DNA from: Octopus bimaculoides | Lineage: Eukaryota | Reading direction: 5' to 3' | Length of the DNA: 64,000 nt | NCBI RefSeq assembly: GCF_001194135.2 | Contig: NC_068989.1 | Location: 95,662,122 to 95,726,121 of the forward strand | Part shown: piece by piece, positions 5,691-62,336 of the stretch | Position numbering within the stretch: the stretch's first letter is position 1 | Layout of the letters: each line of letters starts with the position of its first letter | The notes under the pieces: generated by a model | What the model was told of the DNA's origin: nothing | The model's input: only the letters and a program-made list of their open reading frames with translations | The model's database searches: none | Translations under genes and position numbers: made by a program

Positions 5691-6581
5691 ATGAGTGCAT
5701 GTGTGTCTATGTGTATGTATGTATAGATATATATGTGTTTATAGGTGTGTAACTGTGTTTAATATGTTTGTGTAGATTTGGATGTGGGAAGACCTTTGCT
5801 ACAGAAATTAGCCAGCGAGAAAAAAGAATTCAGCTTATAAACAATGCATATGAAAACACATCACTGAGATGTGAATGATATCAATGGGCTGGAAGACATG
5901 CATTTCTGTGTTGTTATGCTTCATCAACAAAATCCATTGTTCATAGCCCTGTCAGAAAAGTCATTCTCATATTTAACCAACAAAGAGTTCATTTACTGTT
6001 GTGCACCAAGTTCTGTCAGGATGGAATTAATAAAGTAGGGTGTATGAAGCAGCACTGATTGAAATAAAGGTATGTTTGTGTACACTCAGATGTGGACACT
6101 GTCCAGGAAAAAAATCCTCCTTGTAGTCAATATGTATGGAAACACTGCTGTGAATGACATTATTGGACCACAGAATGCAAGATTTTCTATACTTTTATGC
6201 ATCATCAGCTTTGAACATTGAATCATCTGTTATCCACAGCCCACTAAGAACAGTGATTCTTATCCTTAAACAGCACAAATTGTAAGCTGGAATGAATTAA
6301 CAAAAGGCACATGAAGCAAGTATAAGAACGGCTGTATTTTGTGGGGTGTGATGAATACAGTATCCAAACCTGATAACACAGAAATGGATGCAGCCTCCAG
6401 CTCGAACATGTCTGGCAGTGTGTTTTTATACATACTGTCTGTAAGCAGAATATTTTCTCAAGACAATTTCCACAGCAAAAGTCTTTCCATGTTTAAGTGT
6501 ACATGAATGTGTCAGATATAGCTGTACACACCTATATTCCAATCAATGCTGATTTGTGCACCTCTAGTTTATATATATATA

Positions 6582-6726
6582 TCATCATCATCATCATCAT
6601 CATCGTTTAACGTCCGCTTTCCATGCTAGCATGGGTTGGATGATTTAACTGAGGACTGGTGAAACCGGATGGCAACATCAGGCTCCAATCTAAATTTGGC
6701 AGAGTTTCTACAGCTGGATGCCCTTC
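6582..6726 (-). mobile_element. Young 5'-truncated RTE 3' end with (GAT)n tail
   Basis: Near-identical to 29846-30010 and 50931-51070 (GGAAAGCGGACGTTAAACGATGATGAT terminus on minus strand). Confidence 0.85.
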
Positions 6727-8446: not shown

Positions 8447-8738
8447 GCAAAATTGCGGTTGTGGCAGAAACCAGTATAACGCAAATTGGCACATAAAAGC
8501 ACCCATTATACTCTCAGAGTGGTTGGCGTTGTTAGGAAGGGCACCCAGCTGTAGAAAACCATACCAAATCAGAGGCATCCAGCTGTAGAAAACCATACCA
8601 AATCAGAGGCATCCAGCTGTAGAAAACCATACCAAATGAGACTGGAGTCCAGTGCAGCCTTCCAGCATGCCAGCCCAGTCAAACCGTCCAACCCATGCCA
8701 GCAGGGACAACAGATGTTAAATGATGATGATGATGATG
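8447..8738 (+). mobile_element. RTE 3' UTR copy with internal 34-bp triplication
   Basis: GAGTGGTTGGCG..AGGAAGGGCA.CCAGCTGTAGAAA...GTCCAACCCATGCCAGCA...GTTAAATGATGATG. Confidence 0.85.
8540..8641. repeat. 34-bp tandem repeat x3 (GGCATCCAGCTGTAGAAAACCATACCAAATCAGA)
   Basis: Units start at 8540, 8574 and 8608, head-to-tail with no spacers. Confidence 0.95.
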
Positions 8739-9068
8739 AAGTTTATGCAGCCAATATTCAAAGACAAAGTTTGCCTTGTTTTAGCTATCATTCCATCAAT
8801 CATCTACTTAATTAACAAAGATGTTACAGAAATGAAAAATAATAAGAAAGAAAATTTTTTTCAATACATAGCTGTATTGTGAAATATATTATTTAGATAT
8901 ATTAATCTATAAAACTCTGATCGTGTAGGCAACCAAAAATAAAATTTGCATAGTGATAAAGATTGACTAATTGGGTTTTAGTTGCTATTATAAAATCAAT
9001 GTTGTATGGTTACTATTTACTGTTTAGCTGGGTAGATAAACAAACAAACAAACAAATCGATATACATA

Positions 9069-10267: not shown

Positions 10268-10476
10268 TGTACATAAAAAACACCATTTGAGCCAGTGCTG
10301 CTGGACTGGTTGCTGTGCAGGTGGTACATAAAAAACACCATTTGAGTGTGGCCGCCGCCAGTACCGCCTGGTGCAGCCATCTGGCTTGCCAGTCCTCAGT
10401 CAAACCGTCCAACCCATGCCAGCATGGAAAGCAGACGTTAAACGATGATAATGATGATGATCATGGTGATGATGAT
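10268..10476 (+). mobile_element. RTE 3' end with (GAT)n tail
   Basis: GTCAAACCGTCCAACCCATGCCAGCATGGAAAGCAGACGTTAAACGATGAT; 5' end abuts a (TG)n(TA)n tract. Confidence 0.85.
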
Positions 10477-12508: not shown

Positions 12509-14653
12509 AGCCACACACACATATACATATAGACACAAAAGAGAGTAATGAAAATCTTTTAGTTCTGAGACAAAAATTTACTGAGGCTAAAAGGAGTAAT
12601 GAATCAACCATGATAGCCCTACTCATCTGTCCCAATTTTTTTAATTAACATGATTTCTCTTCCACCTCATCCTAATTAAATGGAAGCATAAACGATCATA
12701 CACAATTTGTTAAGATTTAACTAACTTTTTCTAAATATTACTTTAGTGTATCTTATCTACCTGTATTATGGCTGTATTATGGCTGTTCTTGGCTATCATT
12801 TCAAAGCATTTTCTCTTTGATGGTTATTCAGGGACATTACATATCCATCTCATTGCTGCCACCACTAACACCGATTTATTCAATCCCACAAGTTTAGTTT
12901 GATCAACCATCAAATCCTATTGAACTTGCTTCTATTATGCTCTTGGATTTCACTGTTTGCCTATTGCTTAACATTTCCACCTTATCAAAGATACTTCAAA
13001 CAGTCTAGTTATTTCCTATACAGTATAAAATTAATTGCTCAAACTGGATAAGACCAATCACTTCTGATTGACAGGCTGAATAAAACAGTAAATATTTCAC
13101 GTTTTATAATTTCCTTTATATAGCTACATTATCTAAAATTTTAAAACCTGAAATTTAGAACATGTAGTATTCATTTGAAGTATGAAAAATTTTGGAAATG
13201 CAATTTAATTGTAACTTTGACTATGTAAAGTGAGTCTCTAATTTTACTTCAAATTTTTTAAACCAATTATCAACATAAATGAAATAGAAAACTATAAATG
13301 TTTACACTTTTTTCTTTAAATTAAAAAACAAAAGAAAAAAATGAGAAATGACATACATGTACATGGAAGCAGCATTAGTTGTTTTTAGCCAATAATGATG
13401 CTACTGAATGCTACAGATAAATATAGTATATTTTCTATATAAAAACATGGTTGTGGACTGAAAGCTAAAATTGGTTAATTTTTTAAATTTCACTTTATGA
13501 TTTATTTCATGATTAGATCAATAGCAAAAATGTTTAAAAAAAAATAAAACCTCAGGTAAATTTTATTTTTATTTTCCAATTTATTACTTACGCATACATA
13601 AAAATATTCTTTTGTTACATTATTGTTACAATGAAATGAAATTATTCCTACATCAATCATGTGATAAATTTGAAAGTTACCATTAAAAAAGAAATTTTAT
13701 AAGTTGATAAAATACAATAGATACATCTAAGACAACTCTGAAAAAATGCTTTGACATGTTTCTAACAAAACAAAAAAAGAGAATAAATAAATAAATATAA
13801 CTTTTACATGTTGAATCAAATCAATAGCAATTACCATCAAAGACTTATATAGTTTATATAATTTGATGTTTGCCTGTTACCAATATAGGTATATTCTTTG
13901 TGTCAATGGGTAACATCTTCAAGTATTCATCACAATTTTAAATACATCAATTTAGAGACACAGTGACTGAGTACATGATATAAAGAATTGCTTCTCCTTA
14001 GGACACCTTATGCTTATAATATACAACTTTGCTCAGTGAAATGAACAAATATTAGGTCCCCCCCCCACACACACACACACACAGACACTATTTACATCAC
14101 TGTAATAGTGTATATTACACACTAAATCATGCCAGCAAAGAAATAACAATGACTTTATTTGTTTCATTCGCATTTTGTAATTTGTACCAATATTCAATTA
14201 GTTCTTGTTTAAATCATTGTATAAATAATATTCAAATCAGATATGTTCCTAACTCTAACAGTGAATGAATTATCTTAATTCTCAAAACTATGTCAACTAT
14301 AAGAGGACTATGCCATCGTCACAGTGGTAAAAATAAAGAAAAAAAAAGTCAAACAGAGAGCATTTGGTTTAATGCTCAACCTACTGTGAAAGGCATCACA
14401 TGAAACCATCTTGTGCAGATTAGCAGACACTATCTGGGAGGTGTTATTGTTCAGCTATGTGTGTCATTGGAAACAATCCCACATGCAAAGAAACGTTTTC
14501 TATAAATTATTCAACTGGGACAGAGAACTCCTGTGCAATAATGTGCACATGTGTGTGCATGCACACATATGTATAACTGCACAGGAATAATGTATGTATA
14601 AATACATTTATCAGTCTCTCCATATATATATAAGTCTCTATATATCACTATAT

Positions 14654-15040
14654 ATCATCATTTAGCATCCGTTATCCATGCTGGCATGGGTTGGATGGTT
14701 TGAACAAGGCTGGCCAGCAGGAAGGCTGCACCAGATTCCCATCTGATTTGGCAGAGTTTCTACAGTTGGATGCCCTTTCTAACGCCAACCACTCCAAGAG
14801 TGCAATAAGTATCTCTACCTGCCACAGACATGGGTGCCATTTGCCTGACACCAGTATCTGCCACGACTGCAATTTTGCTTGGCTTGATGGGTCTTCTTCT
14901 CAAGCACAACATAATGCCAAAGGTCTCAGTCATTGCCTCCATGAGGCCCAACACTCATAAGGAGCTTTTCATGTGCCGCCAGCATTGACCACTTTGCCTC
15001 TGTGAGGCCCAGTGCTCGAAAGAAGCTTCTTATGTGCCAG
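14654..15040 (-). mobile_element. RTE 3' UTR copy (older subfamily)
   Basis: Reverse complement of the same terminus; shares internal modules (GAGACC, TGAGGCCCA) with 60494-60992 and 32365-32600. Confidence 0.85.
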
Positions 15041-19070: not shown

Positions 19071-20766
19071 ATGTGTGTGCATGTGTAAAAATGTGAATGT
19101 AGATGATTTATCAAGAATTGTGCTCTTTCACTAAACCAATTTCCTCTTAGCCTCTAAATTTCAGAAATATATTGTCATCATCCTCATTATCACCATCATT
19201 CTTACAATAATCTGAACATAAAATTCAAAGCTTTAAAAATATTGTGAAATTCTAAGGTATCTAATATACAAGCAAAAAATAAAATGTTGAATTCATGTCA
19301 TATGTCTTCCACAGCAGATAACTATAAAGGTATTAATTAGTATTCTGTATATATACTTTGCATTTGATAATTATTGTTTAGAAATTAACTAATTAAGAAG
19401 AAAAAAATTATTGTAAAGAGAATTCAATTCTTTTATGTGAGAAGTCCTTCACTACAGGTATCACAACACATCATTTCCGATACAGCAGCTCTATTTCACT
19501 CATTTGCTATTCAATATATACACATATAAGTGTGTGTGTGTGTGCCTGTGCATGCACATGTATTTGCACAAACACTAATACATTTTTTTTAAAATTGAAT
19601 ATTGCATTGATGAGAAAGATGATAACTGAGAGCATTTTTATGGTTACTTCATCAACGCCTTAATGAAATTCTAAAAATCTGTTGACTTCACAATATTCTT
19701 TTTTTTTTTTTTTTAAAAAAAGGTGAAATATAAAAATATTACAGATAAGACTTTTTTTTTTTCAAAAGAAATACATTGAGAGAAATTGTTGAAGATTTTC
19801 GTTTGCACAAACTGATAATCAACAAAACATTTATAACAAAAACTATTATCAATGAATATCATTTAAAAATAGCATAGACATCTTTATGACAGGCTCACTG
19901 AATTATATAATATGCTGACTCTTTAAAAGCAGCAAAATATGAGCAGTATAGAAATAATGTTTAAACAGAAGCTTCATTTAATACTATATTTTTAAAAAGA
20001 AATAACATAGATTTTGTATTTACAACAATAAAAATATAAAGTTTAATAGATCCAGTAACATTCTTTAAGTATTTTCTCTTTTCGCATTTACAAATAAAAA
20101 CATTCTGATAAAATATAAAGGAGCTAAAGGAAATAAATAGGCCAATAGCATGAATTTAGACTACTAAGTTAAGGACTGACGTACTGAATAATGTATGTGG
20201 AAAATTCTTAATTTCTATATTTTTCTTACATTACTTGAAATTTCTGTCTTAGTTGGAGAAAGAAAACAGAAGAACCCAATGATAATATTGATGCTCAATG
20301 AGAAAAAAAGAAAGGTAAAATAATTTCAAGTAACTAAGAATTACTTTTACAAATTTTATAAATATGTTTCGAGAGGTGATATCTTCAGGCATGTTTCAGT
20401 CTTATTGGATCTTATAAGCACAAAGCATACTCTTCTACTGATTTCCAGTGTGTGCTACTTTCAAAAGTTTCTAGTCAATTTCATTGTGTCATGTACTTTG
20501 TAGGATGCTAATCTTATCAATCTTTACTTAACCTTTAGCGTGCTGCTGTTGCATTAAGTTGCCATATGAGTTTTCTCCCTTGTAAGCTGCAGGCACACTG
20601 TGTTACCTGGAGGGGTGCTTAAAATAAACACTTTACAAAGTTTTATTTCCAGTATTTTAAGCTGGAAACAGCCTACTTTCGATTCAGAATGAGGCTAAAC
20701 TTATATTTTCTGATGCTATTTGCATTGTTAATCACTTGACACAAGGCACACAATCTTTTAAATTGA

Positions 20767-22960
20767 TTGGAGTTTTTTGGATGTTTTGCCAGACAAAAAG
20801 TGGCTGCTCCTGTATTTCACAAAGCTTTACTTGAAAACCTTTTTGAAGGATTCAATCAGACAGGTATTGATGTTGAAGTAGTCAGAGGTGATGGTGATGA
20901 TGATGCCAGTGTGATAGTGAGAACGGTGTTGAATGGATACTATCATCCATGGCTGGCTGATTTCAAGGAAAATACTGACCCCAAGGAGGTACCTGATGGT
21001 ATTTCTGAAGGGTAACTCTTTCGTCTCTTCCTGAATGACAAAATTATAACTATGTTTGTCAATGAGACAAATATATATATATATATATGCTAGTCAGGTG
21101 AAGAAAAAAAGAGGGGAAAATGCTGGTGCTCACTCATACATCAACATGTTGAAGGACACCACTTTTGAAGATTTGAAAGCATTCATAACAATTTTGCTTC
21201 TGATTGGGCTTATTAAATGCTCATTTGATTTATACTGGTCTACTGATGATCAAGAATTATGTGTGAGTTTTATAAAAACAAATAACTAGGAAAAACTTGA
21301 ACACATAGAAATCTCATAAAAATTTCATGAAATAATAATTTAATAGTTCTACTATTAAGTATTATAAGTAGAATTTGCTATGATCTACTTCTTGTATGTT
21401 TTCAGTTCTTCACTGTAGTATTCACACCCCTGTGTAAATAAACCTATGCAAAGTCTATAATTATGACAGAATGGAAACATTGTAAACTGCACAACAGTTG
21501 CACTTTTTCTCAATCTAAAAATGATTAACATCTACTTTATAGTTGTATGTTAATTGTATACTAGCTCAGATTGAGAAACATTACATTCAAAAGTCCAAAA
21601 CAGTTAGAGATTTCTGAGTGAACAGTATGCTCGGTAATTTAATCTGTCAACCAACAGATTTATGAAAACTGTATGTTTCAATGATTATATTGCTCACACA
21701 CTAATTCGGCTGATGTAGTGAACACAGTCACTTCTCTGATGCTATTATAGGGATGTTAAATGACCATGATTACACACACACACACGTACAATCATACACT
21801 GGTCTACTGATGATTTTCTTGGGATGCCAGACTTCAAGCACATCATGGTAAGGGATAGTTTTTTTTAAGAATTCTGTATTTTTACCATCTTTTCGACAAC
21901 TCAAAAGCAAAACCAAGCAATCAACCTGAGCATGATAGAGCACATAAAATCCAGCCATATTCTGAAATACTTATGCTACTTTAGTAGAAATACTTTTATA
22001 ACAGAAAGGAACTTTCAGTGGATGAAAGTATGATTCCTTTCAAAGGAACAACAGGCCTAGTGATCCACAAGCCAGAAAAACCAACCAAGTGGGGCCTGAA
22101 AGCCTGAAAGGCTGGCTGGCGTGAAAATTTGCTGGCTGTACGAGGGCAGTTGGTGTTGCACATAAAGTGGTTTCTTCCTTCTTAGAGACTGTGCAAAATA
22201 AAGGACATGTTCTTTACATGGAGAATTTTTTTCTCATTACCTGCATTATTTTATGATCGAGCCCCGCACGGTATAAGAGCATGCAGCAGCAGCAGCAGAG
22301 AGTGCCTAATGAAATCAAAGCAGGAAGTCCCTGAGCAGGGAACCCTTCCTCTAGTCACACATAGGAATGGGTTCCTTTTGTACATTTTTTGCTATGACAA
22401 AAGGTCAGTGAGTCTTCTGATGACTGCCCATTCTGCTAAGACCTTCAGAAAAGAAGTGTGATCAAAATGTCATGAAGATCATAGCAGGATTGTGTGCAAA
22501 CCTTGTACTATGCAGTCCAACTCTCAACACATGGTGGTGGAAATAGACAGAGTGGACAAGCAGATGACATGCTGTCTGGTGCTGCAGAAATGTTACCAAT
22601 TGATGGAAGAAGGTTTTCTTTTATCTTTTCAAAATATGTTTCTGCAATGTTTGGAAAGCCAAGTCAGCTCACTAGGTTAATGCTGAAAATCATCCATTCT
22701 CTACTGGAGGGATACTATTTAGGTGTGCCTTACAGGAGAGGTAGTGGGATAGATGCCCTCCCCTAGAAAGGCTGGTATTTACAGAACACTGCCTTATCTT
22801 TAACCTCAAGTGCCTTCTTGCCGAGATTGTGCTGTTTGTTTGAACCAAGACATGAAGTGCCATACGACCCAGTTCATGAGCAGAAAGTGTGATGTAGTAC
22901 TCTGCCCATACCCTATTTCCAAAGGTACCACAGTCTGATGGATTACAAAATAGACTGCAC
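20767..22960 (+). pseudogene. piggyBac (PGBD4-like) transposase pseudogene
   Basis: FRLFLNDKII.MFVNETN; DLKAFITILLLIGLIK..YWSTDD|FLGMPDFKHIMVRDSF; ELSVDESMIPFKG..KPEKPTKWGLK (first catalytic D at 22021); GHVLYMENFF (second D replaced by E); YDKRSVSLLMTAH; IDRVDKQM; C-terminal CRD CAVC..HTTQFMSRKCDVVLCPYPYFQRYH. Multiple stops and frameshifts. Confidence 0.9.
21251..21797. mobile_element. 547-bp insertion in the piggyBac ORF flanked by a 17-bp direct repeat
   Basis: ACTGGTCTACTGATGAT at 21234-21250 and 21798-21814; removing insert plus one copy rejoins YWSTDD-FLGMPDF in frame. Confidence 0.8.
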
Positions 22961-23411
22961 CCCAGAACTCCATAGACAATGATCAAGGTATGATAAAAGT
23001 ATGTCAATAACATGTGTCTGTTGTTGTTGTTGTTTTCAATAACAAAACATGCATGCAGAACATAATGCATTACATCAAAATATTATTCATCCATTCCTTT
23101 ATTACTATATAAAAAGATCAAGTTTGTATACTAAATACAAGGAAAGTTATAACAATTTTAAAACAGTAGGTGCTCATGTTTTTGCTACATCAAAAAAACA
23201 AAACAATAGTAATGCAATGCCAGGGGAAACAATTGTAGGGGCAATGCAGTGTACTAAAGGTTAATGAAAGAGCTAAGTACACTTAAGAAAAACTTAAGAA
23301 ACTAAATACCACAATGTATTTTTATTAAATACACTGTTTTATTGTCTTTCGTCAAGTTGAAACACACACACAAACTCATATATAAATACTGTACACAAAC
23401 ACATAGATACT

Positions 23412-28858: not shown

Positions 28859-29846
28859 AGAATTCTTCAACAAAAAAAAAAAAAAAGAATCAAATGAATA
28901 AAGAATTCTTGGGCAACAAAAAAGAAGCTACAGTAAAGCTATTTGAGCAAAAATAGTATTTTCATATAAATCTAAATTTCTTTAGTTTCTAAATGTCTGA
29001 TATTGTAAAGTCTATGATCTGCTCTGTTTAAACTTAGGCATTATAGTATTGGCAATTCTTACCTGTCAACACTTAAGCAATATTTAAAAACACATCTCTG
29101 TGCACCTAATTCTATATATTCTATTACAGTGTTTCAGTAAGGATCTAAACAAAGCATCTGCAATTATTTCTTTTAATGAAAAAGATAATATGTATTCAAT
29201 ATTGAATCAAGCAATTCTACAGGGTTGTAAGCAGGACTCAAAATTACAGGAAGACCATAAAAGCCATGTGCATAGTTGTAGTAAGTTTCAACTTCAGCAG
29301 ATAAAAGACGTCACAAAACATACCATGGGATGTAAATTTGCATTCCAATGTTCAATAGTAAAATAACATAATTAGATAATTTCTCTTCTAAAAAATATTA
29401 TACTTTTTCCCATCAGGACAAATTAAGATAAAATAAATCTCTTGTAATCTACCACTGTATATCAAAATTATAATTAACAGAGTAACATTTAAAACTGATT
29501 TAAAGAGGACTGTGACTGCTCCTTAGAAATTAAATAATTTCTTAAATAATATTTAAAGACTTACAACTATCTTTGACAGTTTTCTAATTAGTGCTTAGAG
29601 TTCTCTAATTAAGAAACTAAACAAAGAATAAATAAATGAACTGCCTTTCAACAAATATTGATAAAGTGCCTTGTCAAAAATGTTGAAAATCACAGAAATT
29701 TAATTGCCTTATGTCACTATCAATTGCATTTGTATGAAACAATATTAAACAAAGAAATATCCTTAAAATTGACAGTCTTGTGTTAATTTTAAAAATCTGG
29801 TTCAGTTGTGCATAAGTGATACTCTAAAATATTTCTATTATTATCC

Positions 29847-30010
29847 TCTGAGTGGTTGGCGTTAGGAAGGGCATCCAGCTGTAGAAACTCTGCCAAATTA
29901 GATTGGAGCCTGGTGTTGCCATCCGGTTTCACCAGTCCTCAGTCAAATCGTCCAACCCATGCTAGCATGGAAAGCGGATGTTAAACGATGATGATGATGA
30001 TGATGATGAT
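29847..30010 (+). mobile_element. Young 5'-truncated RTE 3' end with (GAT)n tail and 7-bp TSD
   Basis: ATTATCC at 29840-29846 and again at 30009-30015; interior nearly identical to the other young copies. Confidence 0.9.
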
Positions 30011-36240: not shown

Positions 36241-36307
36241 GAGCATTAACAGTGATTGCTTGCAGTTTGTGATTGATTGCACAACAATTCAATTTCCAAC
36301 CATTTTA

Positions 36308-36482
36308 AAAAGCACCCAGTACACTCTGCCAAGTGGCTGGTGTTAGGAAGAACAACCAGCCATAGAAAGCATGCCAAAGTAGGAAGCAAAACTTGGTGTA
36401 ATATTCTGACTTGCTGTTCCTGTCAAACCATTCAACCCATATCAGCATGGAAACTGGATGTTCAATGACGATGATGATGATC
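36308..36482 (+). mobile_element. Degenerate RTE 3' end
   Basis: AAAAGCACCCAGTACACTCT...GTTAGGAAG...GTCAAACCATTCAACCCATATCAGCATGGAAA...GATGATGATG. Confidence 0.75.
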
Positions 36483-36891
36483 ATCATCAAATTTCAAGGA
36501 GATTTGTTTACAACAACTAGATTTAATAAACATAGCACCAACAGGTGTAGATTTGAACTTATGAACTTGACCATTTTAGCTCATTCAAAACATAAATATG
36601 TAAACTCTAAACTGACAAAGGTTCAAATCAACTTAGAAACTGCTACTTATGAAATAGGCTAATATTCGAATAGAGCATAGTGGTCATTGTGAAATGACAG
36701 CATACAGCCAGGCATCTGTCATAAAGTCCATTTATAATTGATAGAAATTTTCACAAGAGCAGCACTTCAAATCCCTTTCCACAGACTGATTAATTTAGAT
36801 TTGAATCTACAGACTGATGAAATTAAAGTAAATATTATAGCTGTAATCTAAAAACAGTTGATCAATTCTTTTTTTTTTTTTTAAATATTCA

Positions 36892-40213: not shown

Positions 40214-40790
40214 TACAAAGCAGTATATTATATAAGTAAAGTTAGATAAGGCTGGTTTATGGGATTACCCTGGGTTTCACATCCATAAAGCACTTAGCTT
40301 TACAGGGTATTATCAGATCGCAAACCTGTTGGCTTATGGCCTCACTAGAAAATGGAGGAGGAAAGGACCTCACTAGTCAATGTCAACAACAAAGGACTGT
40401 CTCCATTTGGCTATCGATTGTAAGTAGTCCTATTATTTTGTGGATTCTAATAGGGCAGAAGGAATTTCCTGAAATGCAGGCATGGTCCAAAGACCTCTGT
40501 TCTGGAGTTAAGGATGTTCCCCCAGTCGAGGGAGTCCTTTAGTATCCTCACCTGTTCCACTATGCACAGTTCACAATGCTTGGTCCCGTTTATGTACGAG
40601 CTTGAATTTTCTAGGATTCCCCATGACATTATGTGTGGAATCCCATAGTCCTTCAGCTGGCATACATGGCTGGCTAATGATATAATGTATCTCCTTTTGA
40701 ATATTCCGAAGGAGGATCTGTGGTTGGAGAGGCATTGCTTGAATGTGTTACTGGAGCAACAGACGTATGTTAATATTTATTTCTAAAGAC
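40214..40790 (-). mobile_element. Penelope-like element 3' fragment (GIY-YIG endonuclease C-terminal half plus downstream region)
   Basis: Minus strand: ..SSNTFKQCLSNHRSSF...SLASHVCQLKDYGIPHIMSWGILENSSSYINGTKHCELCIVEQVRILK....NILNSRTEVFGPCLHFRKFLL (cf. TFK.RY.NH..SF..LS.HIW.LK...I.W.IL...Y....K.C.LC..EK..I...LN.R.E...C.H..KF.L). Confidence 0.8.
40254..40326 (-). ncRNA. Degenerate type I hammerhead ribozyme in the Penelope-like element
   Basis: Minus strand GGTTTG CGAT CTGATAA T ACCCTGTAAAGC TAAGT GCTTTATGGATGT GAAACCCAGGGTA ATCCCATAAACC: core CTGATAA (canonical CTGANGA), stem II, GAAA, palindromic ACCC-A-GGGT, GTA triplet, stem I GAT/ATC plus GGTTTG/TAAACC. Confidence 0.65.
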
Positions 40791-42305: not shown

Positions 42306-42525
42306 CATCATCGTCTTCATTGAATAACGTATGTTTCCCGTGCTGGCATGGGTTGGACAGTTTGATAGGAGCTGGCAAACTGGAGAGCTGCACCTGGCTC
42401 TAATTCTATGGTTTCTGTGGCTGGATGCCCTTCCCAATGCCAACCCTTTTACAGAGTGTATTGGGTGCTTTTTACATGGCACTGGCATGGGTTCTGTTTA
42501 CATGGCACCAGTACAGGTGCTTTTC
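42306..42525 (-). mobile_element. RTE 3' end (older)
   Basis: GCTGGCATGGGTTGGACAGTTTGA...GCTGGATGCCCTTCCCAATGCCAACC. Confidence 0.8.
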
Positions 42526-43971: not shown

Positions 43972-43981
43972 TCTTCCTCAC
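43972..43981 (-). other. Candidate 10-nt microexon or recursive splice site (AG|GTGAGG)
   Basis: Minus strand TGACTAATTTTTTTTCTTTTGTTTAG|GTGAGGAAGA|GTGAGA. Confidence 0.45.
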
Positions 43982-44101
43982 CTAAACAAAAGAAAAAAAA
44001 TTAGTCAAAATTTCCAATTCTCCTTCTTGATAAAATTAAAGCCCAAAACTGACCAAAATACAGGATGATATCATAAAAGGCATAGTTGATTTTCTACTCA
44101 C
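43982..44101 (-). other. Candidate 120-nt intron with consensus donor, branch point and acceptor
   Basis: ATG|GTGAGTAG ... GACTAAT (branch A about 20 nt from the AG), polypyrimidine tract, TTTAG|. Confidence 0.55.
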
Positions 44102-49395: not shown

Positions 49396-50930
49396 TTAAC
49401 TTTTTTAAAAGGATGGCTATCTCCAGAGAGCATCTTTGCTTTTATGTTGCCTTAATTCAATCAAACCAGTAAATTTTTAGAACTTGCTTGAATAATTAAT
49501 ATAATTTTCAAGAAATCCATTACATTTTGGCTTAACAATCAAACTAGTCCCTGAAGTAATTGTCTGAGGATCTTGATCTCAAGGTGGGGGGGGGGGATGG
49601 TTAAGGATACAAGCTGGCCCTAAATTTTTAGTAACCAGGTAGAGGAAATCATGACTAAGTTGATTTGACAAATACATTTGAGAGTTTGGTACAGACTATG
49701 TAACTGATCTTCCAGCATTGTATACAAATTTAGAAATGTCAAAATTTAGACAGGTCTCCTACAAATTGAGTGGTACTAACAAAGGGTACTGTAGGGATAT
49801 TTCAAGTGTGCTGTTTTTATATAACAATAATGAGCCACTTCTGAATTAGAGTGAAAACCTGTGTTAAAATGTATATCCGTTTAAACACACACACACACAC
49901 CCACACCTAAATATACACTATACTATTGTTGGCCAAGTCTGAGACTAAGAAACTTCTCTTGATCAAACAAAGGATGTAGTCACAAGATGGTAGACAACAG
50001 AAGCAATAAACTTTATTTGTTTCCTTGGTTCCAGAATACTCTATCAATGCAAAAAAAGTATAATTTTGAAAAGAACACATTGCACCAATAATTAGCTGAA
50101 AGCCACTGTCTTTGGTCAACAGAAATGAGTTGTTTTTCTGTATAACAATGGTTGGTTAAATACATAGCATGAATGACTTATCAAAGACATTCAGGAGATA
50201 AAGTTTTGAGACACTTCCACCTGTTCAAGCATTACAGTGTTTTCCTACAACATAAAAAGTTCTTAAAATGGGTAACCACTAATGAGTATTTCAATAAATT
50301 AAAGTAGCTTAAAAACTAATTCTGTTTGAAACTTGACAAATACAACAAAACAAATGCAATGAAACTTAACCTATCAAAAACAAAAACAAAAAGATGGACA
50401 TCAACCACTGTCCTAAATGAAGCACTTTTGCAATAGCTATTAGTGTGCAACAGTCTACTTGAAACACCAAAAATAAATTAAACTTTTTTCACTTCACTAC
50501 CTCAGTTATTTTATTAGCTAAAATAGCATCTGTCGTATACACAATTCCTGGTGTGGACATATTTTATCACATTATTCTTTGGTTGTATACAAAAAACAAT
50601 TCCATGAAACAAGCTACTCAAAAAAGAAAGTATATTCTATATATTTTAACAAGACAGCAAAATATATATTTCAGTAATCTTTTCTGAGAATAAACAATTT
50701 TCCAAAGAATTCTAAAACATAACAGACTGACAATATATATCAAATGCACAGTTACTACTGTTTTTGTAAAACAAAAACATTATACAAACAACTGGATTCT
50801 TATTATGCTAGTCAAAATATTAACTTACACCTATGACATTATATATATATATATATATATAAACAAATGCAGGTACACATACAAGCATAAATATACATAC
50901 ATATATGTGTGTGTATATATATATATATAT

Positions 50931-52160
50931 CATCATCATCATCATCGTTTAACGTCCGCTTTCCATGTTAGCATGGGTTGGACGATTTGACTGAGGACTG
51001 GTGAAACCGGATGGCAACACCAGGCTCCAGTCTGATTTGGCAGAGTTTCTACAGCTGGATGCCCTTCCTAACGCCAACCACTCAGAGAGTGTAGTGGGTG
51101 CTTTTACGTGTCACCCGCACGAAAACGGCCACGCTCGAAATGGTGTCTTTTATGTGCCACCCGCACAAGCCAGTCCAGGGGCACTGGCAACGATCTCGCT
51201 CGAAAATCCTACGGGAGCCAGTCAGGCGGTACTGGCAACGGCCACGCTCAAAATGGTGCATCTCATGTNNNNNNNNNNNNNNNNNNNNNNNNNNNNNNNN
51301 NNNNNNNNNNNNNNNNNNNNNNNNNNNNNNNNNNNNNNNNNNNNNNNNNNNNNNNNNNNNNNNNNNNNNNNNNNNNNNNNNNNNNNNNNNNNNNNNNNNN
51401 NNNNNNNNNNNNNNNNNNNNNNNNNNNNNNNNNNNNNNNNNNNNNNNNNNNNNNNNNNNNNNNNNNNNNNNNNNNNNNNNNNNNNNNNNNNNNNNNNNNN
51501 NNNNNNNNNNNNNNNNNNNNNNNNNNNNNNNNNNNNNNNNNNNNNNNNNNNNNNNNNNNNNNNNNNNNNNNNNNNNNNNNNNNNNNNNNNNNNNNNNNNN
51601 NNNNNNNNNNNNNNNNNNNNNNNNNNNNNNNNNNNNNNNNNNNNNNNNNNNNNNNNNNNNNNNNNNNNNNNNNNNNNNNNNNNNNNNNNNNNNNNNNNNN
51701 NNNNNNNNNNNNNNNNNNNNNNNNNNNNNNNNNNNNNNNNNNNNNNNNNNNNNNNNNNNNNNNNNNNNNNNNNNNNNNNNNNNNNNNNNNNNNNNNNNNN
51801 NNNNNNNNNNNNNNNNNNNNNNNNNNNNNNNNNNNNNNNNNNNNNNNNNNNNNNNNNNNNNNNNNNNNNNNCGGAAGCTATCGACTACCTCTAGTTTTTC
51901 ACCCTGGAATGAGATAGAAGTTGTTTCCTGTTTGTTTACAGTCTTTATTGCACCTGAACATCTGCCACAAACAAAAACTAACTTGCTAGTTAACCTGCCT
52001 TTGATGTTGCTGCACCTCTTATGTGTCCATAGCTTGCACCGGGTACATCTTATAGAGTTACTACCTACTCCTTTTCTACATACTGAGCAGGGCCATCTAC
52101 CTGAAGGGGTTTGTGTTTTATCTACCTTCCTACTTATTAGGATTTTGGATTTTGGTTTTT

Positions 52161-52162
<2 letters not shown>
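50931..52162 (-). mobile_element. Young 5'-truncated RTE LINE spanning an assembly gap (ORF fragment with PHD-like finger plus 3' UTR)
   Basis: Stop-free KILISRKVDKTQTPSGRWPCSVCRKGVGSNSIRCTRCKLWTHKRCSNIKGRL...CGRC...GEKLEVVDSF at 51873-52150; same-strand 3' UTR and (GAT)n tail at 50931-51268. Continuity across the Ns is assumed. Confidence 0.8.
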
Positions 52163-52198
<36 letters not shown>

Positions 52199-52217
52199 CA
52201 CACATATATATAAATAA

Positions 52218-52979
52218 CAGCTATACTACATGGAAGTGTGACATAGGCTGTGACTACTGAGGACATGTGAATGCTTGAAAGAAATGAAGCCATCACATTC
52301 ACTGGATGGGTAATGTTAGTGTGCGTGTACAACAGAGTATAAGTGATTTGAGAGAAAAATTGGGTATACGAGGCATCAGATGTAGTGTGCAAGAGAGAAG
52401 CTACACTGGTGTGGTCATATGATGCATATAGATGAAGACAGCTACATCAAAAAGTGTCAATCTCTAATTGTGGATAGAACATGTGGAAGAGATAAACCAA
52501 GGAAAATGTAGGACAAAGTGGTAAGAAAAGAATATTCAGTTATTGGATTTCACAGACGAGATAGCAAGAGACCAAGACTTTTGCAGTGCTTGAGAGGACA
52601 CATCAAGATAAGTAAAACTGTAGCTGTCCCTGCAAGCATGTCCTTTACATCCCTTTCTCAGCCAAGAGATCCTCGTCTTGTGCACTCTTGGGTGCTGGTA
52701 CCATCTGAAAACACCTATGTTGGTGTCACATAAAAGCATCCATGTTGGTGCCACATTAAAGTGCCTGTACCAGTGCTTTGAAAAAGCACCTGCACTGATG
52801 CCACATTGTACAATCTGTAAAGTGGCTGGCATTAGGAAAGGCATCTTGCCATAGAAACCATGCCAAAACAGACAAATGGAGAGCAGGCAACTCCCTGGCT
52901 GGCCCAGTTCCTGTTAAACTCTCCAACCCGTACTAACATAGAGATCAAACATAATATCATGATGATGACGATGATGATG
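52218..52979 (+). mobile_element. Older RTE LINE 3' portion (ORF C-terminus plus 3' UTR)
   Basis: LLHGSVT*AVTTEDM*MLERNEA..W..NVSVRVQQSISDLREKLGIRGIRCSVQERS...WCGHMMHIDEDSYIKKC..CGRDKPRK; decayed 3' terminus with (GAT)n. Confidence 0.85.
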
Positions 52980-55392: not shown

Positions 55393-57194
55393 TATGTGCT
55401 TACTGTAACCTCTTAGAGCTTAAGTTTGTACTGAAACATTCCAGATTGTTTCACACAATATTCAGTAACTATTTGCTAAGAATGAAGTGTTTAAACTATC
55501 CAGCTTGAATTTCTGTACTGCAAAAATTGTAACCATTAACTTTGTGTAAGTATTAAAATACTGTATAAAGCATAGATATTACTTGCATAATCCTACCTAA
55601 GTCTTATTTTCATCCATGTGATTGTATTTGAATGTAAAGGGATGAGAGAGAAAGAATATTTTCTTTGTTGCAGTGTGTTGCCTGCTTAATGTATTGTTTT
55701 TCCTTAGGTAGAAATTTGAGCAATGTTCAAAGTTATTTGGTATGTTGTTTGAGTATATTACAAGGGTGCTTGCGTATATTCCAAAAGCTTCTTTACACAG
55801 TAAGACTATTCATGATTTAAGCTTCTTTCAATTCTTCTGGTGCCTTGGTGACTTCTGAAATGTTATTGATCTAATGCCAATATGCAAATTACCACACACA
55901 TGATATGCATAACCTTTCTACAGCAAAGTAATTTTGTAAATTTTTGTAGTTATTGTAATCATTGGCAATGTACTAACAAAAGTTAAATGGACTTGAAAAA
56001 GAACTGCACTTGCTCTGAAACTGTAGACCATGTGAAAGCCTGTGCTTTTTACCAAATATCTGAGATATATTGATAGTCCCAAAGTTTCACAGGTCAAACT
56101 ATACAACTTAACATAGCTGTAGCTTCATCAGGAGGAATGCAGAATCAGGAAAAAGGATGTACCCAAATGAGATTTTATGGTTCTTCGGTATGTCCCTTGA
56201 TATTCTGACTTCAGATCTTAGTCAATTTTGCTTTTCAGTTTTATGAGATAGATAAATAAAAGCCACCTGTTATAAAATGTTAATGTAATCAAATATACCC
56301 AAGAAGACTTCAGCATGACCAATGACTGAAATCAGTAAAATAGTGAGAAGATAGGTTAAAAAAATGGGATTTTCATGCTATGCATATGAATGTAAGAGTA
56401 TGTGCAAGTGAACATGGGTGTGTCTTTGCAAATTTGAACTTATTGTTGATGTCTTTTCTTAGATCACAGCCATTGCTTAGAGAGAATGATTTGGGAATTG
56501 TACTATATTGGATATATATACATGGGTTAAACATGAACAATAATTGTTATTTCTATTAGACATTACAATATACAGATGCGTTAAAATGAGCTTTGCAAAG
56601 TTTATAGAGTTATCTCAAATCTTCAACAACAACAACAACAATTCTTAACGATAATTTAAATTTAGCTCAGAGTTTTAGCAAGAGATCAATTTTACAATCT
56701 TTAATAATTATTAGGCAACAATTAAAAAAAAAAGTAGAGATCAAAAAATCTAAATTATGAAAGTTATAATAGATAAGAAAAGAAATTCAAACAACAGGTC
56801 TTTTGTATGATTATAGTCATACGAGTCCTGTTTATTGCATATTTTAAAAACTAAATAAAAATTTAAAAATTCAAAAACTCAGTAATTAAAGAATATCATA
56901 GATAAAATCAGAATAGTTCTACTACATACTTAAACATATCTAGATAAAGTTTTAAAATTAATTTCACATACTATTGATATTGTTTGATAAAATATAACCA
57001 TAAAGACAAGAGAATAAGTAAAGAATTCTGATAATAACCTCTTTAAGAAAGCCTACAATAAGGAACTACCAGTCTATTATCTGACAATTTATTTCAATTA
57101 AAATGGTTGGTTATTCTAAATTATTAATAATCTAAATTGATAATTTGAAAATCTTTTTAAAACTTGTGACAGAACAATATTACATGCTACTCAC

Positions 57195-57217
57195 CAATAT
57201 TTGACAAGAGCACTTAC
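57195..57217 (-). other. Candidate recursive splice site with 23-nt RS-exon/microexon
   Basis: Minus strand TGATTTCCTTTCTTCTATTGCAG|GTAAGTGCTCTTGTCAAATATTG|GTGAGTAG. Confidence 0.5.
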
Positions 57218-58332
57218 CTGCAATAGAAGAAAGGAAATCAGTAATTCAATAAAATAATCTCTCAATATATAAATATAATTCAATAATATAAACTATAGCA
57301 TAAAATTAATCTTTTTTAAATTCATGATTAACTGCAAATATAATTCTCAGTATGCGAGAATAATTTTAGAAAAAAACTCGCTCGTGGTTATTAAGGAAAT
57401 AGAATACAATTGGTTTTGCACTGAAAGAACAAGAAAAATTGTTTTGAAATACAATTAAATATCAATTATACAACATTCAGGTGTCACAGACGTTTTGCAC
57501 TTTTTCTTTTTTTTCTTTCATTTGTTTGTGGTGTGGTGATGGTGGTGGGACATCAGTGCATTTTTAGTCCCATATCCCAAGCTGGAGATTAAATATTGTT
57601 CTTCAAATATGAGTTGATGTTACATCATGATGATACAAAGCAATGTAAGAACTAATAAACTAAATGAAAATGCCATTAACACATTCTAATTAATAATCAT
57701 AACCTTCCTTTTTTTTTTTTTTCCAGACAGGAACAATTATACAGAACTAGCTGAAGAGTGATATAAAAGAATTTTTAAAATTAACAAATAATTAGCATTT
57801 CTACAAAGTGAATTGCAAATTAATTTTTGATTTGAAAGAATGCAAAACACTACACATCAAAAAAAAACAATTCCTCGTGGCCTTTCAATAATATTTCCTT
57901 TTCAACTTTGTCAGATTGTTATCAATTATTATTATTACTGTTTCATCCAAAATAGAAGACAGTAAAACAATAATAAAGTGGATGCAAGCCTTTTTTTAGA
58001 TTCTTGATTTGTAACCTCCTGGGTTTCAAACTCATACAANNNNNNNNNNNNNNNNNNNNNNNNNNNNNNNNNNNNNNNNNNNNNNNNNNNNNNNNNNNNN
58101 NNNNNNNNNNNNNNNNNNNNNNNNNNNNNNNNNNNNNNNNNNNNNNNNNNNNNNNNNNNNNNNNNNNNNNNNNNNNNNNNNNNNNNNNNNNNNNNNNNNN
58201 NNNNNNNNNNNNNNNNNNNNNNNNNNNNNNNNNNNNNNNNNNNNNNNNNNNNNNNNNNNNNNNNNNNNNNNNNNNNNNNNNNNNNNNNNNNNNNNNNNNN
58301 NNNNNNNNNNNNNNNNNNNNNNNNNNNNNNNN

Positions 58333-58883: not shown

Positions 58884-60493
58884 CTAAATTTGTAAAAATG
58901 AACAAATACAGAGATAAAATTTAAGAAATTTATGATGGTCAGCTTAATAGTCTTATAGTTACACATTCAACAAAACAATTGATAAGGCATCAACATTTAT
59001 CTATATCAATATTTGATAATGGTGATAATTTCAAACAAAGAAAACAAATTACTAGCAGATATTCATTACAGTAGTATTGTCTTTGTAATATTCCATGTGA
59101 AGTTTACATAATTAATGATTGACAGTAAAATAAATTTATGGTGTATCTCATCAATTGTATATTTTGAAATATGCAAGATAAAAAAACTATAGATAACATA
59201 TATATATATTAGATGATGCATAATTAATAGCAATTAATCAGAATAATATTTTAATGATAGAAATCTACCTACAATGCCTAATTTGCAATGGCTTAAAAGT
59301 ATCAACTATGGAAACATAAAAGTAATTTTTGTTAATAATAATAATAAGTACATAGTCAAATAAATATAAAAAATATAGTTGCTGTTTAGTTTCATGTCAG
59401 TTCTGACAGAGCAGATGTATGAAGATCTCATCTTATTTCTGAACAATGTATCCAAGACTATACTACCTGATGCATCCTTTTACCTTTTTTTAAAGATAAT
59501 AGGGTGTGGCTTAAAGTGAACTGGGCTGCTGTTTCTAACAAGTGATTGCATAGAAGTTTTCTCCTATTGGCTAATTGTTAAGCTTCAATTTAGAAATTGT
59601 AATTTGTGATGGAGAAAGTTCTAGATTATCTCTTATGTCAAATAATTCTTTAACATATACATTTATATATCTATAACATATTTTCATAAGGTATACAGGG
59701 ACTTGTAAATCATAGTGATTTCAAATATACTACACTGTTCAACTTGTAAGCAGAATTTCAGTTGTAATTTTTCAAGTTTAGCAAGGTTTCTGTATAATAG
59801 CTTAGTATTCTTACTTAGTTTCATCCCTATTTTCAATGAATTTTTTAACAATAAATTATCAATAAACATTCTCAAAATTGGATGCCATTCAATAATTTGA
59901 AAGAATTTCATTACAATAGCAAAATAGATTTATAATTCTCAACTATCATGAAAATTTAAGCCAATACATAAGCAAATACATGTTTAAAATTGTAAAAATA
60001 ATACATAAAATTACATTGCTGCAAAATACTCTGAACTTCCAAAATGTGTAAGTACAAATACGAAAAGACACTTGAAATAACTTCAATTATACTAACAATC
60101 ATTTTTGGTTGAGGGAAGAAAGATACAAATTATTTCTGAAGAAATGTAGCATACATAAAGAAAAGTAGTGCCAAAAGTAAAAAATATCTAAGTTCTAAAA
60201 AAACATTACTATAAAAATCATTTCTACAATTAATTTTATGAAATGATTTTTATGAATAAGTCAATATAAATAAGTAGCTAATTAAAACCTGTTCAAATAA
60301 GTTATGTGAAATTAAAGGACAATATAAATTAATTAAATGCTTAAGATCATAGTTAATTCTAATTAAGTGAATTACTATATTCAACATATATCTTACTTAA
60401 TATCTTAATACATATTATTATTATCATTATTATTGTCTACCTCTACCTGTGGTAGGGGTAAGCCCAGGAAGAAGTGGTGAAGCATAAACTTTG

Positions 60494-60992
60494 AACTTTG
60501 GGCCTCACAGAGGCAATGACTAGTGACTGAGACCTTTGGCGATATGCTGCGCTAGAGAAGACCCATCAAGCCAAATGAAATCACAGTCGTGGCTGATGTT
60601 AGTGTCGCATAACTGGCACACATGCTGGTGGCACATAAACAGCACCTTTCATGCATTGGACCTCACAGAGGCAAAGTGGCTGAGGCTGGTGGCACATGAA
60701 CAGCTCCTTTCGAATGTCGGGCCTCATAAAGGCAATGACTGAGACCTTAAGCATTATGCTGTGCTAGAGAAGACCCATCAAGCCATGTAAACTCACAGTC
60801 ATGACAGATACCGGTGTGAATCAAATGGCACCCATGCCAGTAAAAGCATGTCAAAGCACCCATTACACTCTCGGAGTGGTTCACATTAGGAAGGGTATCC
60901 AACCATAGAAACCCTGCCAAATCAGACTGGAGTCTGGTGCAGCCTTCCAGCTTACCAGCCCTGGTCAAACCGTCCAACAATGCCAGCATGGA
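60494..60992 (+). mobile_element. RTE 3' UTR (older subfamily) with internal duplication of about 110 bp, tail missing
   Basis: GGGCCTCA.A.AGGCAATGACT..GAGACC...GCTAGAGAAGACCCATCAAGCCA at about 60500 and 60720; ends GTCAAACCGTCCAACAATGCCAGCATGGA. Confidence 0.85.
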
Positions 60993-61146
60993 CATCATCA
61001 TCAACATCATGATCGTTTAACGTCCGCCTTCCATGCTAGCATGGGTTGGACAATTTGACGGAGGACTGGTGAACCAGATGGCTGCACCAGGCTCCAATCT
61101 GATCTGGCAGAGTTTCTACAGCTGGATGCCCTTCCTAACGCCAACC
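60993..61146 (-). mobile_element. Young RTE 3' end, tail-to-tail with the preceding copy
   Basis: CATCATCATCAACATCATGATCGTTTAACGTCCGCCTTCCATGCTAGCATGGGTTGG...GGATGCCCTTCCTAACGCCAACCA. Confidence 0.9.
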
Positions 61147-61339
61147 ATGCTCATATGGTTATGGTCAAACAGCTGACAAGCAAATCTGTGGTATTGAGCA
61201 GAATATTTGCTGTAGCCCATCTTTTATACTAAGACAAAACATGTACATGGTAACACTTTCAATCAGTTAAGATCAGAAGCCATGAGAGCCACTGCCTGGG
61301 ACTGCATCAGGGCATTTATTATTATCGTTATTATTAATA

Positions 61340-61739: not shown

Positions 61740-62330
61740 GCAAGAACACAGGGAGTTAGAGAAGCATAGTGCATGAAGAGATGTAGTTTGGTTCATTGGA
61801 GTGAACCTTTTATCACCAAACATCTTAGTCCATTATCTCCTCCGTTTGGCTCAGCATATTGCAAGCAGTCCTCACTACTTCATCCCATGCCTTCCTGAAT
61901 TTCCTCTTCTACAGGTCCCATCCACTTTAAGCAATCAACCCTCTTTTATAAACCTGCTTTCATTCATAGGCATTACCTGTCCAAAATATTGTTGTCTTCT
62001 TTCTTGCATGCTACATCCGATTCCTCTTGGATCTAACTTTACTTTCACACATTTGCACTTTGTTCTACATTGTACACTGGTGTTGCACATCCAATGGATC
62101 ATACTAGCTTCATTCCTCTAGTCTTTGCATGTCTTTTGCATCCAGGCCCATACCTCACTATCATAGAGCATAGCCATTTATAAACTAGCATCAAACAATC
62201 TAATCTGACCTTTTGTGGCCAATAGACATAATAACTTTCTAAACTTTCTCTATCAGCATCCAGAATATATATTCTGGGGATGTAGACCTGAATGTTCTCT
62301 CTAGATATACCAAACAATCCTTTCAGATAT
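61740..62330 (-). mobile_element. Old RTE LINE ORF C-terminal fragment
   Basis: Minus strand MAMLYDSEVWAW...RNEASMIHWMCN...RGIGCSMQERRQQYFGQVM, homologous to 52218-52520. Confidence 0.75.
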
Positions 62331-62336
62331 GGCTAA

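What the first reader, a model, noticed from the sequence alone, without database searches (positions are those of the whole stretch)
57189..57240. Textbook recursive-splice-site architecture: strong acceptor, immediate GTAAGT, second donor 23 nt later
Seen: minus strand TTTCCTTTCTTCTATTGCAG|GTAAGT, then 23 nt from the junction G|GTGAGT. The 3' splice site is fused to a perfect 5' splice site and followed by a competing downstream donor. Established: this matches the RS-exon model (zero-length exon, or inclusion of a short exon when the downstream donor wins). Inference: because 23 nt is not a multiple of 3, inclusion would shift frame relative to skipping and could act as a poison or quality-control switch.
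Basis: partly seen in the sequence, partly recalled or inferred. Interest (0 to 1): 0.72.

Follow-up and report, generated by a model that had tools for sequence, protein, structure and literature searches.

The report
Recursive-splice-site look-alike in octopus non-coding DNA
A textbook-looking fused acceptor/donor splice motif really is present on the minus strand of this octopus genome window, but nothing available here shows that it is transcribed, spliced or conserved, so it remains a motif-level candidate, not a demonstrated recursive splice site.

Summary
The minus strand reads CTGAT-TTCCTTTCTTCTATTGCAG|GTAAGT (junction 57218|57217), followed 23 nt later by TTG|GTGAGT (57194-57189). It is the only AGGTRAGT in the window and the best fused AG|GT by about 5 bits. 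It also has TT at -5/-6 and a yUnAy branch-like motif at -21.

A null that keeps the window's real acceptor and donor score distributions expects about 0.02 such sites per 64 kb. That is rare locally, but hundreds per Gb-scale genome, or tens if the second donor is also required.

The window is octopus DNA (retroelement hits to Octopus bimaculoides). It is 31% GC and repeat-rich, with no detectable host exon on either strand.

Two indirect hints fit a minus-strand transcription unit: a T>A skew of +5.2% on the minus strand, and uniform CpG depletion (o/e 0.20). Neither can be calibrated here. No annotation, RNA data or orthologous DNA could be reached.

The 23-nt "RS-exon" is about half the usual ~50 nt and below the ~51-nt limit for efficient exon definition. 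The "out-of-frame = poison switch" idea restates a known generic property of cryptic RS-exons.

Verdict: unused chance motif about 0.45, working ratchet point about 0.35. Low to moderate interest.

The parts
57237..57241 (-). CTGAT, a branch-point-like yUnAy motif; the A at 57238 is position -21 from the acceptor
   Evidence: Read from the sequence. Fly recursive branch points lie at -36 to -21 (bioRxiv 10.1101/006163). Such a motif is expected by chance in about 40% of comparable stretches (my estimate), so it carries little weight.
57221..57237 (-). Polypyrimidine tract TTTCCTTTCTTCTATTG, with T,T at -6/-5 (57223, 57222)
   Evidence: 16 of 20 pyrimidines. The acceptor PWM score is 14.6 bits, rank 5 of 6834 AGs.
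57218..57220 (-). CAG acceptor; the putative 3' splice junction follows 57218
57212..57217 (-). GTAAGT donor fused to the acceptor (putative ratchet-point 5' splice site); unspliced it reads CAG|GTAAGT
   Evidence: The 9-mer score is 13.2 bits; only 6 of 6521 GT sites in the window reach 12.
57195..57217 (-). 23-nt interval GTAAGTGCTCTTGTCAAATATTG, the putative cryptic RS-exon; it has a TAA in one of three frames
   Evidence: Length and translations.
57189..57194 (-). Second donor GTGAGT, preceded by TTG
   Evidence: 9-mer score 8.9 bits. The only other donor-like site within 320 nt is weak (+148, 5.2 bits).
43976..44007 (-). Possible sibling site: GACTAATTTTTTTTCTTTTGTTTAG|GTGAGG (junction 43982|43981), 13.2 kb downstream on the same strand; donor-like sites at +10 and +132
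   Evidence: It is the second-best fused AG|GT in the window at 18.5 bits; sequence; downstream donors. It lacks T at -6. Two sites of >=18 bits against 0.2 expected gives permutation p=0.016.

Best explanation
The most likely single reading is a chance juxtaposition. A strong acceptor-like tract is followed by a consensus donor hexamer in T-rich, single-copy, non-coding octopus DNA. Either it is not used by the spliceosome, because it is not in a minus-strand transcript, or it is used only as splicing noise.

Shown: the motif, its rarity per window, and the absence of exons, RNA families and repeat copies around it.

Inferred: that it is not used. This rests on base rates, because no positive evidence of use could be obtained.
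For: - A null that keeps the window's real splice-score distributions expects about 0.02 sites this strong per 64 kb. The independent count-based estimate is 0.03. Scaled to a Gb-size genome, that is hundreds of chance sites, and tens with a second donor within 100 nt.
- Published antisense background for ratchet-point motifs is 0.07-0.12 per 100 kb in every animal tested. Large repeat-rich vertebrate genomes show no sense-strand enrichment (PMC2773006, Table 2).
- Efficient intronic RS sites number 197 in fly but only 10 in human (PMC6224609).
- No host exon was detected on either strand in 64 kb.
- The strand-wide excess of weaker fused sites disappears under the permutation null: 10 observed against 7.2 expected.
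- The 23-nt spacing is atypical for RS-exons (PMC8605326, PMC8378409).
- No open paper reports recursive splicing in octopus, cephalopods or molluscs.
Against: - Every checkable sub-feature fits a working ratchet point at once: a top-5 acceptor, a perfect donor, TT at -5/-6, a branch motif at -21, no intervening AG, and a strong second donor.
- The same strand carries a T>A skew of +5.2% (13 of 16 bins, p=5e-4). T>A is the general sign of a coding strand (PMC5786239).
- CpG o/e is 0.20 with TpG/CpA at 1.32 across the whole window. This fits germline methylation, which in octopus marks gene bodies (PMC9476566).
- If the window is genic, the intron is longer than 64 kb, which is exactly where recursive sites occur.
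- All five non-vertebrate animals tested show 4-22x sense-strand enrichment of the motif (PMC2773006).
Confidence: 0.45

Rival explanations
1. A working recursive splice site (ratchet point) inside a very long (>64 kb) intron of a minus-strand gene whose exons lie outside the window.

Inferred mechanism, following the fly and vertebrate model:
1. U2AF/U2 recognise the strong acceptor, helped by U1 at the +23 donor.
2. The upstream exon is joined to 57217.
3. This regenerates MAG|GTAAGT, which outcompetes TTG|GTGAGT, so the 23 nt are removed with the rest of the intron (a zero-length exon).
4. Rare use of the +23 donor would insert 23 nt.
For: - Full motif match including TT at -5/-6 (bioRxiv 10.1101/006163).
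- A downstream donor is present (PMC8605326, PMC6110457).
- The regenerated donor scores 11.9-13.2 bits against 8.9 for the +23 donor.
- Minus-strand T>A skew (PMC5786239).
- CpG decay fits a methylated gene body (PMC9476566).
- No exon in 64 kb, so any intron here is very long.
- A second fused site lies 13.2 kb downstream on the same strand. The median fly recursive segment is 16.4 kb (bioRxiv 10.1101/006163).
- The locus is single-copy in the window and less structured than shuffles (z=+2.36).
- Invertebrate long introns are 4-22x enriched for the motif on the sense strand (PMC2773006).
Against: - There is no evidence of transcription, junctions, lariats or conservation.
- The host gene is unknown, and most of the octopus genome is intergenic (PMC9476566).
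- The 23-nt RS-exon is half the usual ~50 nt and below the ~51-nt exon-definition limit (PMC8605326, PMC8378409). The next donor is weak and sits at +148.
- The retroelement fragment on this strand would be sense-oriented.
- The sibling site lacks T at -6.
- The skew and CpG hints cannot be calibrated without an octopus baseline.
Confidence: 0.35
2. An ordinary 5' splice site, or a tandem pair of alternative donors 23 nt apart, at the end of an untranslated or lncRNA exon or a pseudoexon on the minus strand. One example is the 203-nt unit 57420-57218, which is opened by the acceptor TTTTTCTTGTTCTTTCAG at 57421. On this reading the pyrimidine tract is just the exon's 3' end.
For: - CAG|GTAAGT is by itself the perfect donor 9-mer.
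- An acceptor of 9.7 bits lies 203 nt upstream.
Against: - The 203 nt have stops in all frames and are 23% GC.
- Acceptors of >=8 bits occur about every 730 nt on this strand. One within 400 nt is therefore expected in roughly 40% of cases.
- There is no transcript evidence.
Confidence: 0.12
3. The motif is carried by an old transposable-element copy that is single-copy in this window but repeated elsewhere in the genome. Its features would then reflect the element's consensus, not local function.
For: About half of the octopus genome is repeats (PMC9476566). The window holds several SINE-like families, a piggyBac remnant and a retroelement fragment.
Against: BLAST of 56200-58030 against the whole window finds only itself. 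No repeat was found around the site. No TE-like ORF lies within about 1 kb of the site.
Confidence: 0.05
4. A plus-strand element, such as a U1-snRNA-like gene or pseudogene. The plus strand reads ACTTACCTG, like the 5' end of U1 snRNA (the U1 sequence is from my own knowledge).
For: Only the 9-nt complementarity, which is inherent to any consensus donor.
Against: There is no Rfam match at gathering thresholds anywhere in the window. There is also none at E<=1 in 56700-57700.
Confidence: 0.01

Closest known systems
Drosophila intronic ratchet points with cryptic RS-exons (Hatton 1998; Burnette 2005; Duff 2015; Joseph 2018/2021; read here via bioRxiv 10.1101/006163 and PMC8605326)
   Same: - The juxtaposed (y)nNCAG|GTAAGT motif.
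- A very strong pyrimidine tract with TT at -5/-6.
- A branch-like motif within the -36 to -21 range.
- A downstream donor.
- An interval that is not a multiple of 3 and looks non-coding.
- A possible second site at a fly-like spacing of 13 kb.
   Different: - The organism is a mollusc, in which recursive splicing is unreported.
- The host intron, usage and conservation are all unknown.
- The putative RS-exon is 23 nt, not about 50 nt.
Vertebrate RS-sites and RS-exons (Sibley 2015; Blazquez 2018, PMC6224609)
   Same: The same two-step logic: the exon is defined through a downstream 5' splice site, then the regenerated RS donor competes with that downstream donor. The genome context is also large and repeat-rich.
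   Different: In vertebrates only about 10 efficient intronic sites are known, and the motif is not enriched on the sense strand (PMC2773006). By that analogy, a motif alone predicts little.
Pseudoexons and cryptic splice-site pairs in long non-coding stretches
   Same: Strong splice-like signals without coding potential, at a frequency compatible with chance.
   Different: Here the acceptor and donor are fused with zero spacing and both are near-perfect. That is rarer than an ordinary pseudoexon.

Membership tests
Recursive splice site / ratchet point | [quoted passage not shown] | tested here: met
   It is the best fused site in the window at 23.4 bits; unspliced it reads CAG|GTAAGT.
Recursive splice site / ratchet point | TT at -5/-6 of the acceptor (99.5% of fly ratchet points; bioRxiv 10.1101/006163) | tested here: met
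   T at 57222 and 57223. The rule is established for flies only.
Recursive splice site / ratchet point | Lies on the sense strand inside a long intron (fly range 11-133 kb) | tested here: inconclusive
   No exon was found in 64 kb on either strand. The minus-strand T>A skew and CpG decay fit a minus-strand gene body but are uncalibrated. No annotation could be reached.
Recursive splice site / ratchet point | Exon-to-site junction reads, a sawtooth read density, and lariats starting at the regenerated donor | not testable with these tools
   No RNA-seq data are accessible.
Recursive splice site / ratchet point | The motif is conserved well above the flanking intron and above control AGGT sites (PMC6110457; bioRxiv 10.1101/006163) | not testable with these tools
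   No other cephalopod DNA could be reached. Exact and gapped scans of the metagenome collection found nothing.
Cryptic RS-exon (exon-definition model) | A downstream 5' splice site delimits a short exon of about 50 nt | tested here: inconclusive
   A strong donor is present at +23 (8.9 bits) and only a weak one at +148. 23 nt is well below the ~50 nt typical of flies (PMC8605326) and below the ~51-nt exon-definition limit (PMC8378409).
Cryptic RS-exon (exon-definition model) | The regenerated RS donor is stronger than the RS-exon donor, so the exon is skipped | tested here: met
   MAG|GTAAGT scores 11.9-13.2 bits against 8.9 for TTG|GTGAGT, using a generic PWM. This assumes the upstream exon ends in MAG.
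Poison (NMD) cassette exon or regulated switch | The exon is included in a fraction of mRNAs from a coding-region intron and introduces a frameshift or premature stop | not testable with these tools
   Only the arithmetic holds: 23 is not a multiple of 3, and there is a TAA in one frame. The host gene, reading frame and inclusion level are unknown.

The most novel reading that the evidence does not exclude
The site, perhaps together with the weaker one at 43981, is a functional ratchet point in a >64-kb intron of an octopus gene. That would be the first recursive splice site described in a mollusc or lophotrochozoan. It would operate with an unusually short 23-nt RS-exon, which suggests recognition without classical exon definition.
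Probability: 0.33. Interest if true: 0.5.

Novelty: new member of a known kind. Interest (0 to 1): 0.24.

Why it matters
If the site is used, recursive splicing would extend from insects and vertebrates to cephalopods. Cephalopod genomes combine invertebrate ancestry with a vertebrate-like size and repeat load. That combination bears on whether ratchet points are an ancestral bilaterian way of handling long introns.

A 23-nt RS-exon would also test how far the exon-definition requirement of the current model stretches.

If the site is not used, it is a useful reminder that a perfect motif is expected hundreds of times by chance in a Gb-scale AT-rich genome. A single site cannot decide either question. 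A genome-wide sense-versus-antisense count in annotated long octopus introns could.

Tried and rejected
1. Exact look-up of two >=100-aa window ORFs to place the window in an annotated assembly: not on record.
2. Protein search with the ORF of the commonest interspersed repeat, hoping to reach contigs of the same or a sister species: no candidate at all. Fishing for orthologous DNA through junk ORFs next to the site was therefore abandoned.
3. Look-up of the 95%-identical retroelement hit P0002 for a possible allelic locus: not on record. The octopus hits come from UniRef or metaclust without contigs.
4. Two scans of the metagenome collection, one for the exact junction 26-mer and one for a gapped architecture pattern: 0 hits.
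5. Exon hunting with stop-free segments, splice-flanked open segments of >=38% GC, and Pfam: only TE-derived or repeat-derived pieces.
6. Rfam at gathering thresholds over the window and at E<=1 locally: nothing, which rejects a U1-like or other RNA gene.
7. The Markov-1 null suggested a striking minus-strand excess of fused sites. I rejected that as overstated, because a permutation null removed most of it.
8. Pfam on four further fragments that looked TE-like by eye (4.6 kb, 22.2-22.8 kb, 40.5 kb, 62 kb): no hits, so those calls stay unverified.
9. CpG-island or promoter search: the only CpG-rich spots are young repeat copies.
10. I left unused the third homologue search, the representative search and the structure tools. 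No candidate exon justified their cost.

Full report
**1. The observation**

The minus strand reads ...GAATTACTGATTTCCTTTCTTCTATTGCAG|GTAAGTGCTCTTGTCAAATATTG|GTGAGTAGC... The first junction lies between 57218 and 57217, and the second donor is at 57194-57189. The interval is exactly 23 nt.

- T,T at -5/-6 (57222/57223).
- CTGAT with its A at -21 (57238).
- No AG between that A and the acceptor.

**2. Is it more than chance?**

Within the window, yes.
- It is the only AGGTRAGT on either strand.
- With generic splice PWMs it is the best of 305 AG|GT sites: 23.4 bits against 18.5 for the runner-up.
- The acceptor ranks 5th of 6834 AGs.
- The unspliced 9-mer is the perfect donor CAG|GTAAGT.

The size of the surprise depends on the null.
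- First-order Markov sequences give 0.03 per window for a simple definition. None of 300 simulations reached 23.4 bits.
- Real DNA has clustered T-tracts. A permutation that re-pairs the window's own acceptor and donor scores expects 0.016 (minus strand) plus 0.003 (plus strand) sites this strong.
- A count-based estimate gives 85 strong acceptor-like sites x 49 GTRAGT / 124,600 positions = 0.03.
- A donor of >=8 bits within 100 nt adds a factor of about 0.05 (79 such sites among about 124,600 positions).

One window in about 50 should therefore carry such a fused site by chance, and about one in 1000 the full architecture. In an octopus genome of about 2.7 Gb (size from my own knowledge), that is hundreds and tens of sites respectively.

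**3. What surrounds it**

The window is draft eukaryotic DNA: 31% GC, eight N gaps and many microsatellites.

Transposable-element and repeat content:
- A retroelement tail with a PHD finger at about 51.9-52.4 kb (minus strand) matches Octopus bimaculoides proteins at 71-95% identity. The source is therefore an octopus.
- There is a decayed piggyBac-type transposase at about 20.7-23 kb (plus strand).
- Several interspersed repeat families have up to 10 copies each.

The site's own neighbourhood:
- The 1.8 kb around the site is single-copy in the window.
- It has no Rfam match, even at E<=1.
- It folds less stably than shuffled sequence (z=+2.36).

I found no credible host exon on either strand. 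Long stop-free segments and splice-flanked open segments are all TE-derived, repeat-derived or low-complexity. If the window is genic, it lies inside an intron longer than 64 kb.

**4. Indirect evidence on transcription and strand**

Strand skew. After masking repeats, the minus strand has T>A by 5.2% (13 of 16 4-kb bins, p=5e-4) and G>C by 2.1% (not significant). T>A is the general signature of the coding strand in eukaryotes (PMC5786239, Discussion).

CpG decay. CpG o/e is 0.20 with TpG and CpA both at 1.32, uniformly along the window. That is the footprint of methyl-CpG decay. In O. bimaculoides, methylation is concentrated on the bodies of highly expressed genes. Intergenic CpGs, which make up more than 85% of all CpGs, are largely unmethylated (PMC9476566).

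Both hints point to a minus-strand gene body. I could not calibrate either against octopus intergenic DNA, so I treat them as weak.

Sibling sites. The apparent excess of weaker fused sites on the minus strand mostly disappears under the permutation null: 10 against 7.2 expected. Only the two strongest sites, 57217 and 43981, stand out: 2 against 0.2 expected, p=0.016. The 43981 site lies 13.2 kb downstream, which is close to the fly median segment of 16.4 kb (bioRxiv 10.1101/006163). It lacks T at -6.

**5. Mechanism, if the site is used**

This follows the established model (PMC8605326, PMC6224609, PMC6110457).
1. The acceptor is recognised, helped by U1 at a downstream donor.
2. The upstream exon is ligated to 57217.
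3. A donor is regenerated.

With a usual MAG exon end, the regenerated donor scores 11.9-13.2 bits against 8.9 for TTG|GTGAGT. The fused donor should therefore win and the 23 nt should be discarded.

Two cautions apply.
- Length. Cryptic RS-exons are about 50 nt (PMC8605326), and exons under 51 nt are poorly handled by exon definition because of steric interference (PMC8378409). 23 nt is atypical, and the next donor (+148) is weak.
- Frame. Being out of frame is the norm for cryptic RS-exons, which are 'always skipped' (PMC8605326).

**6. Base rates from the literature**

Ratchet-point motifs occur at 0.07-0.12 per 100 kb on the antisense strand of long introns in all animals tested. On the sense strand they are enriched 4-22-fold in four insects and a sea urchin, but only 0.9-1.5-fold in vertebrates (PMC2773006, Table 2). 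No mollusc was tested.

Efficient intronic sites number 197 in fly and 10 in human (PMC6224609). In flies only 6% of sufficiently long introns are recursive (bioRxiv 10.1101/006163).

I found no open paper reporting recursive splicing in octopus, cephalopods or molluscs.

Octopus is an invertebrate with a vertebrate-like, repeat-laden genome, so I cannot say which regime applies.

**7. Weighing**

These numbers are my own judgement.
- Probability that the window is an intron of a minus-strand gene: roughly 0.4-0.5. Most of the genome is intergenic, but the skew and the CpG decay raise the figure.
- Given that, probability that a site this complete is functional: roughly 0.5-0.8, depending on which regime octopus follows.

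Overall estimates:

| Reading | Probability |
|---|---|
| Unused chance or cryptic motif | about 0.45 |
| Working ratchet point | about 0.35 |
| Conventional donor or pseudoexon | about 0.12 |
| TE-borne or other | about 0.06 |

The pseudoexon case includes, for example, the non-coding 203-nt unit opened by the acceptor at 57421.

**8. Verdict**

If the site is real, it is a new member of a known kind and the first from a mollusc. It is otherwise mechanistically ordinary, apart from the very short RS-exon.

The decisive data were out of reach here: annotation, total-RNA junction and lariat reads, cross-species alignment, and a genome-wide sense/antisense motif count.

Noticed in passing
window 43976-44007 (minus): A second fused acceptor|donor on the same strand: GACTAATTTTTTTTCTTTTGTTTAG|GTGAGG. 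It scores 18.5 bits, has a CTAAT branch-like motif, and has donor-like sites at +10 and +132. It lies 13.2 kb downstream of the main site.
   Followed up: partly
whole window: Strong, uniform CpG depletion (o/e 0.20 in unique DNA, 0.11-0.26 per 8 kb) with TpG and CpA both at 1.32. This is the footprint of methyl-CpG decay. It is notable because octopus methylation is reported mainly on gene bodies.
   Followed up: partly
whole window: Persistent strand asymmetry after repeat masking. The minus strand has T>A by 5.2% (13 of 16 bins) and G>C by 2.1%. This is compatible with minus-strand transcription across the window.
   Followed up: partly
window 51082-52392 (minus), interrupted by the N gap 51269-51871: The 3' part of a non-LTR retroelement ORF ending in a PHD finger. 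It is 71-95% identical to Octopus bimaculoides reverse-transcriptase/PHD proteins, and this is what identifies the organism.
   Followed up: yes
window about 20700-23100 (plus): A decayed, frame-broken piggyBac-type transposase (weak Pfam DDE_Tnp_1_7 match at 21050-21286), with other transposase-like stop-free pieces around it.
   Followed up: partly
window 6567-6726, 8446-8739, 10366-10465, 14597-15039, 29840-30010, 36306-36487, 42306-42513, 50892-51114, 60475-61147: Interspersed SINE-like repeat families with up to 8-10 copies in 64 kb, in both orientations. They are the only CpG-richer spots in the window. A protein search with their spurious ORF found nothing.
   Followed up: partly
window 40450-40776 (minus), 4582-4788 (plus), 61938-62332 (minus): Stop-free segments that by eye resemble TE proteins: a Penelope/GIY-YIG-like segment, a mariner-like transposase tail, and a LINE reverse-transcriptase C-terminal region. 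Pfam gave no hit, so these calls are unverified.
   Followed up: partly
window 57421 (minus): A strong acceptor-like site, TTTTTCTTGTTCTTTCAG, lies 203 nt upstream of the fused site. Together they outline a non-coding 203-nt pseudoexon (23% GC, stops in all frames).
   Followed up: yes
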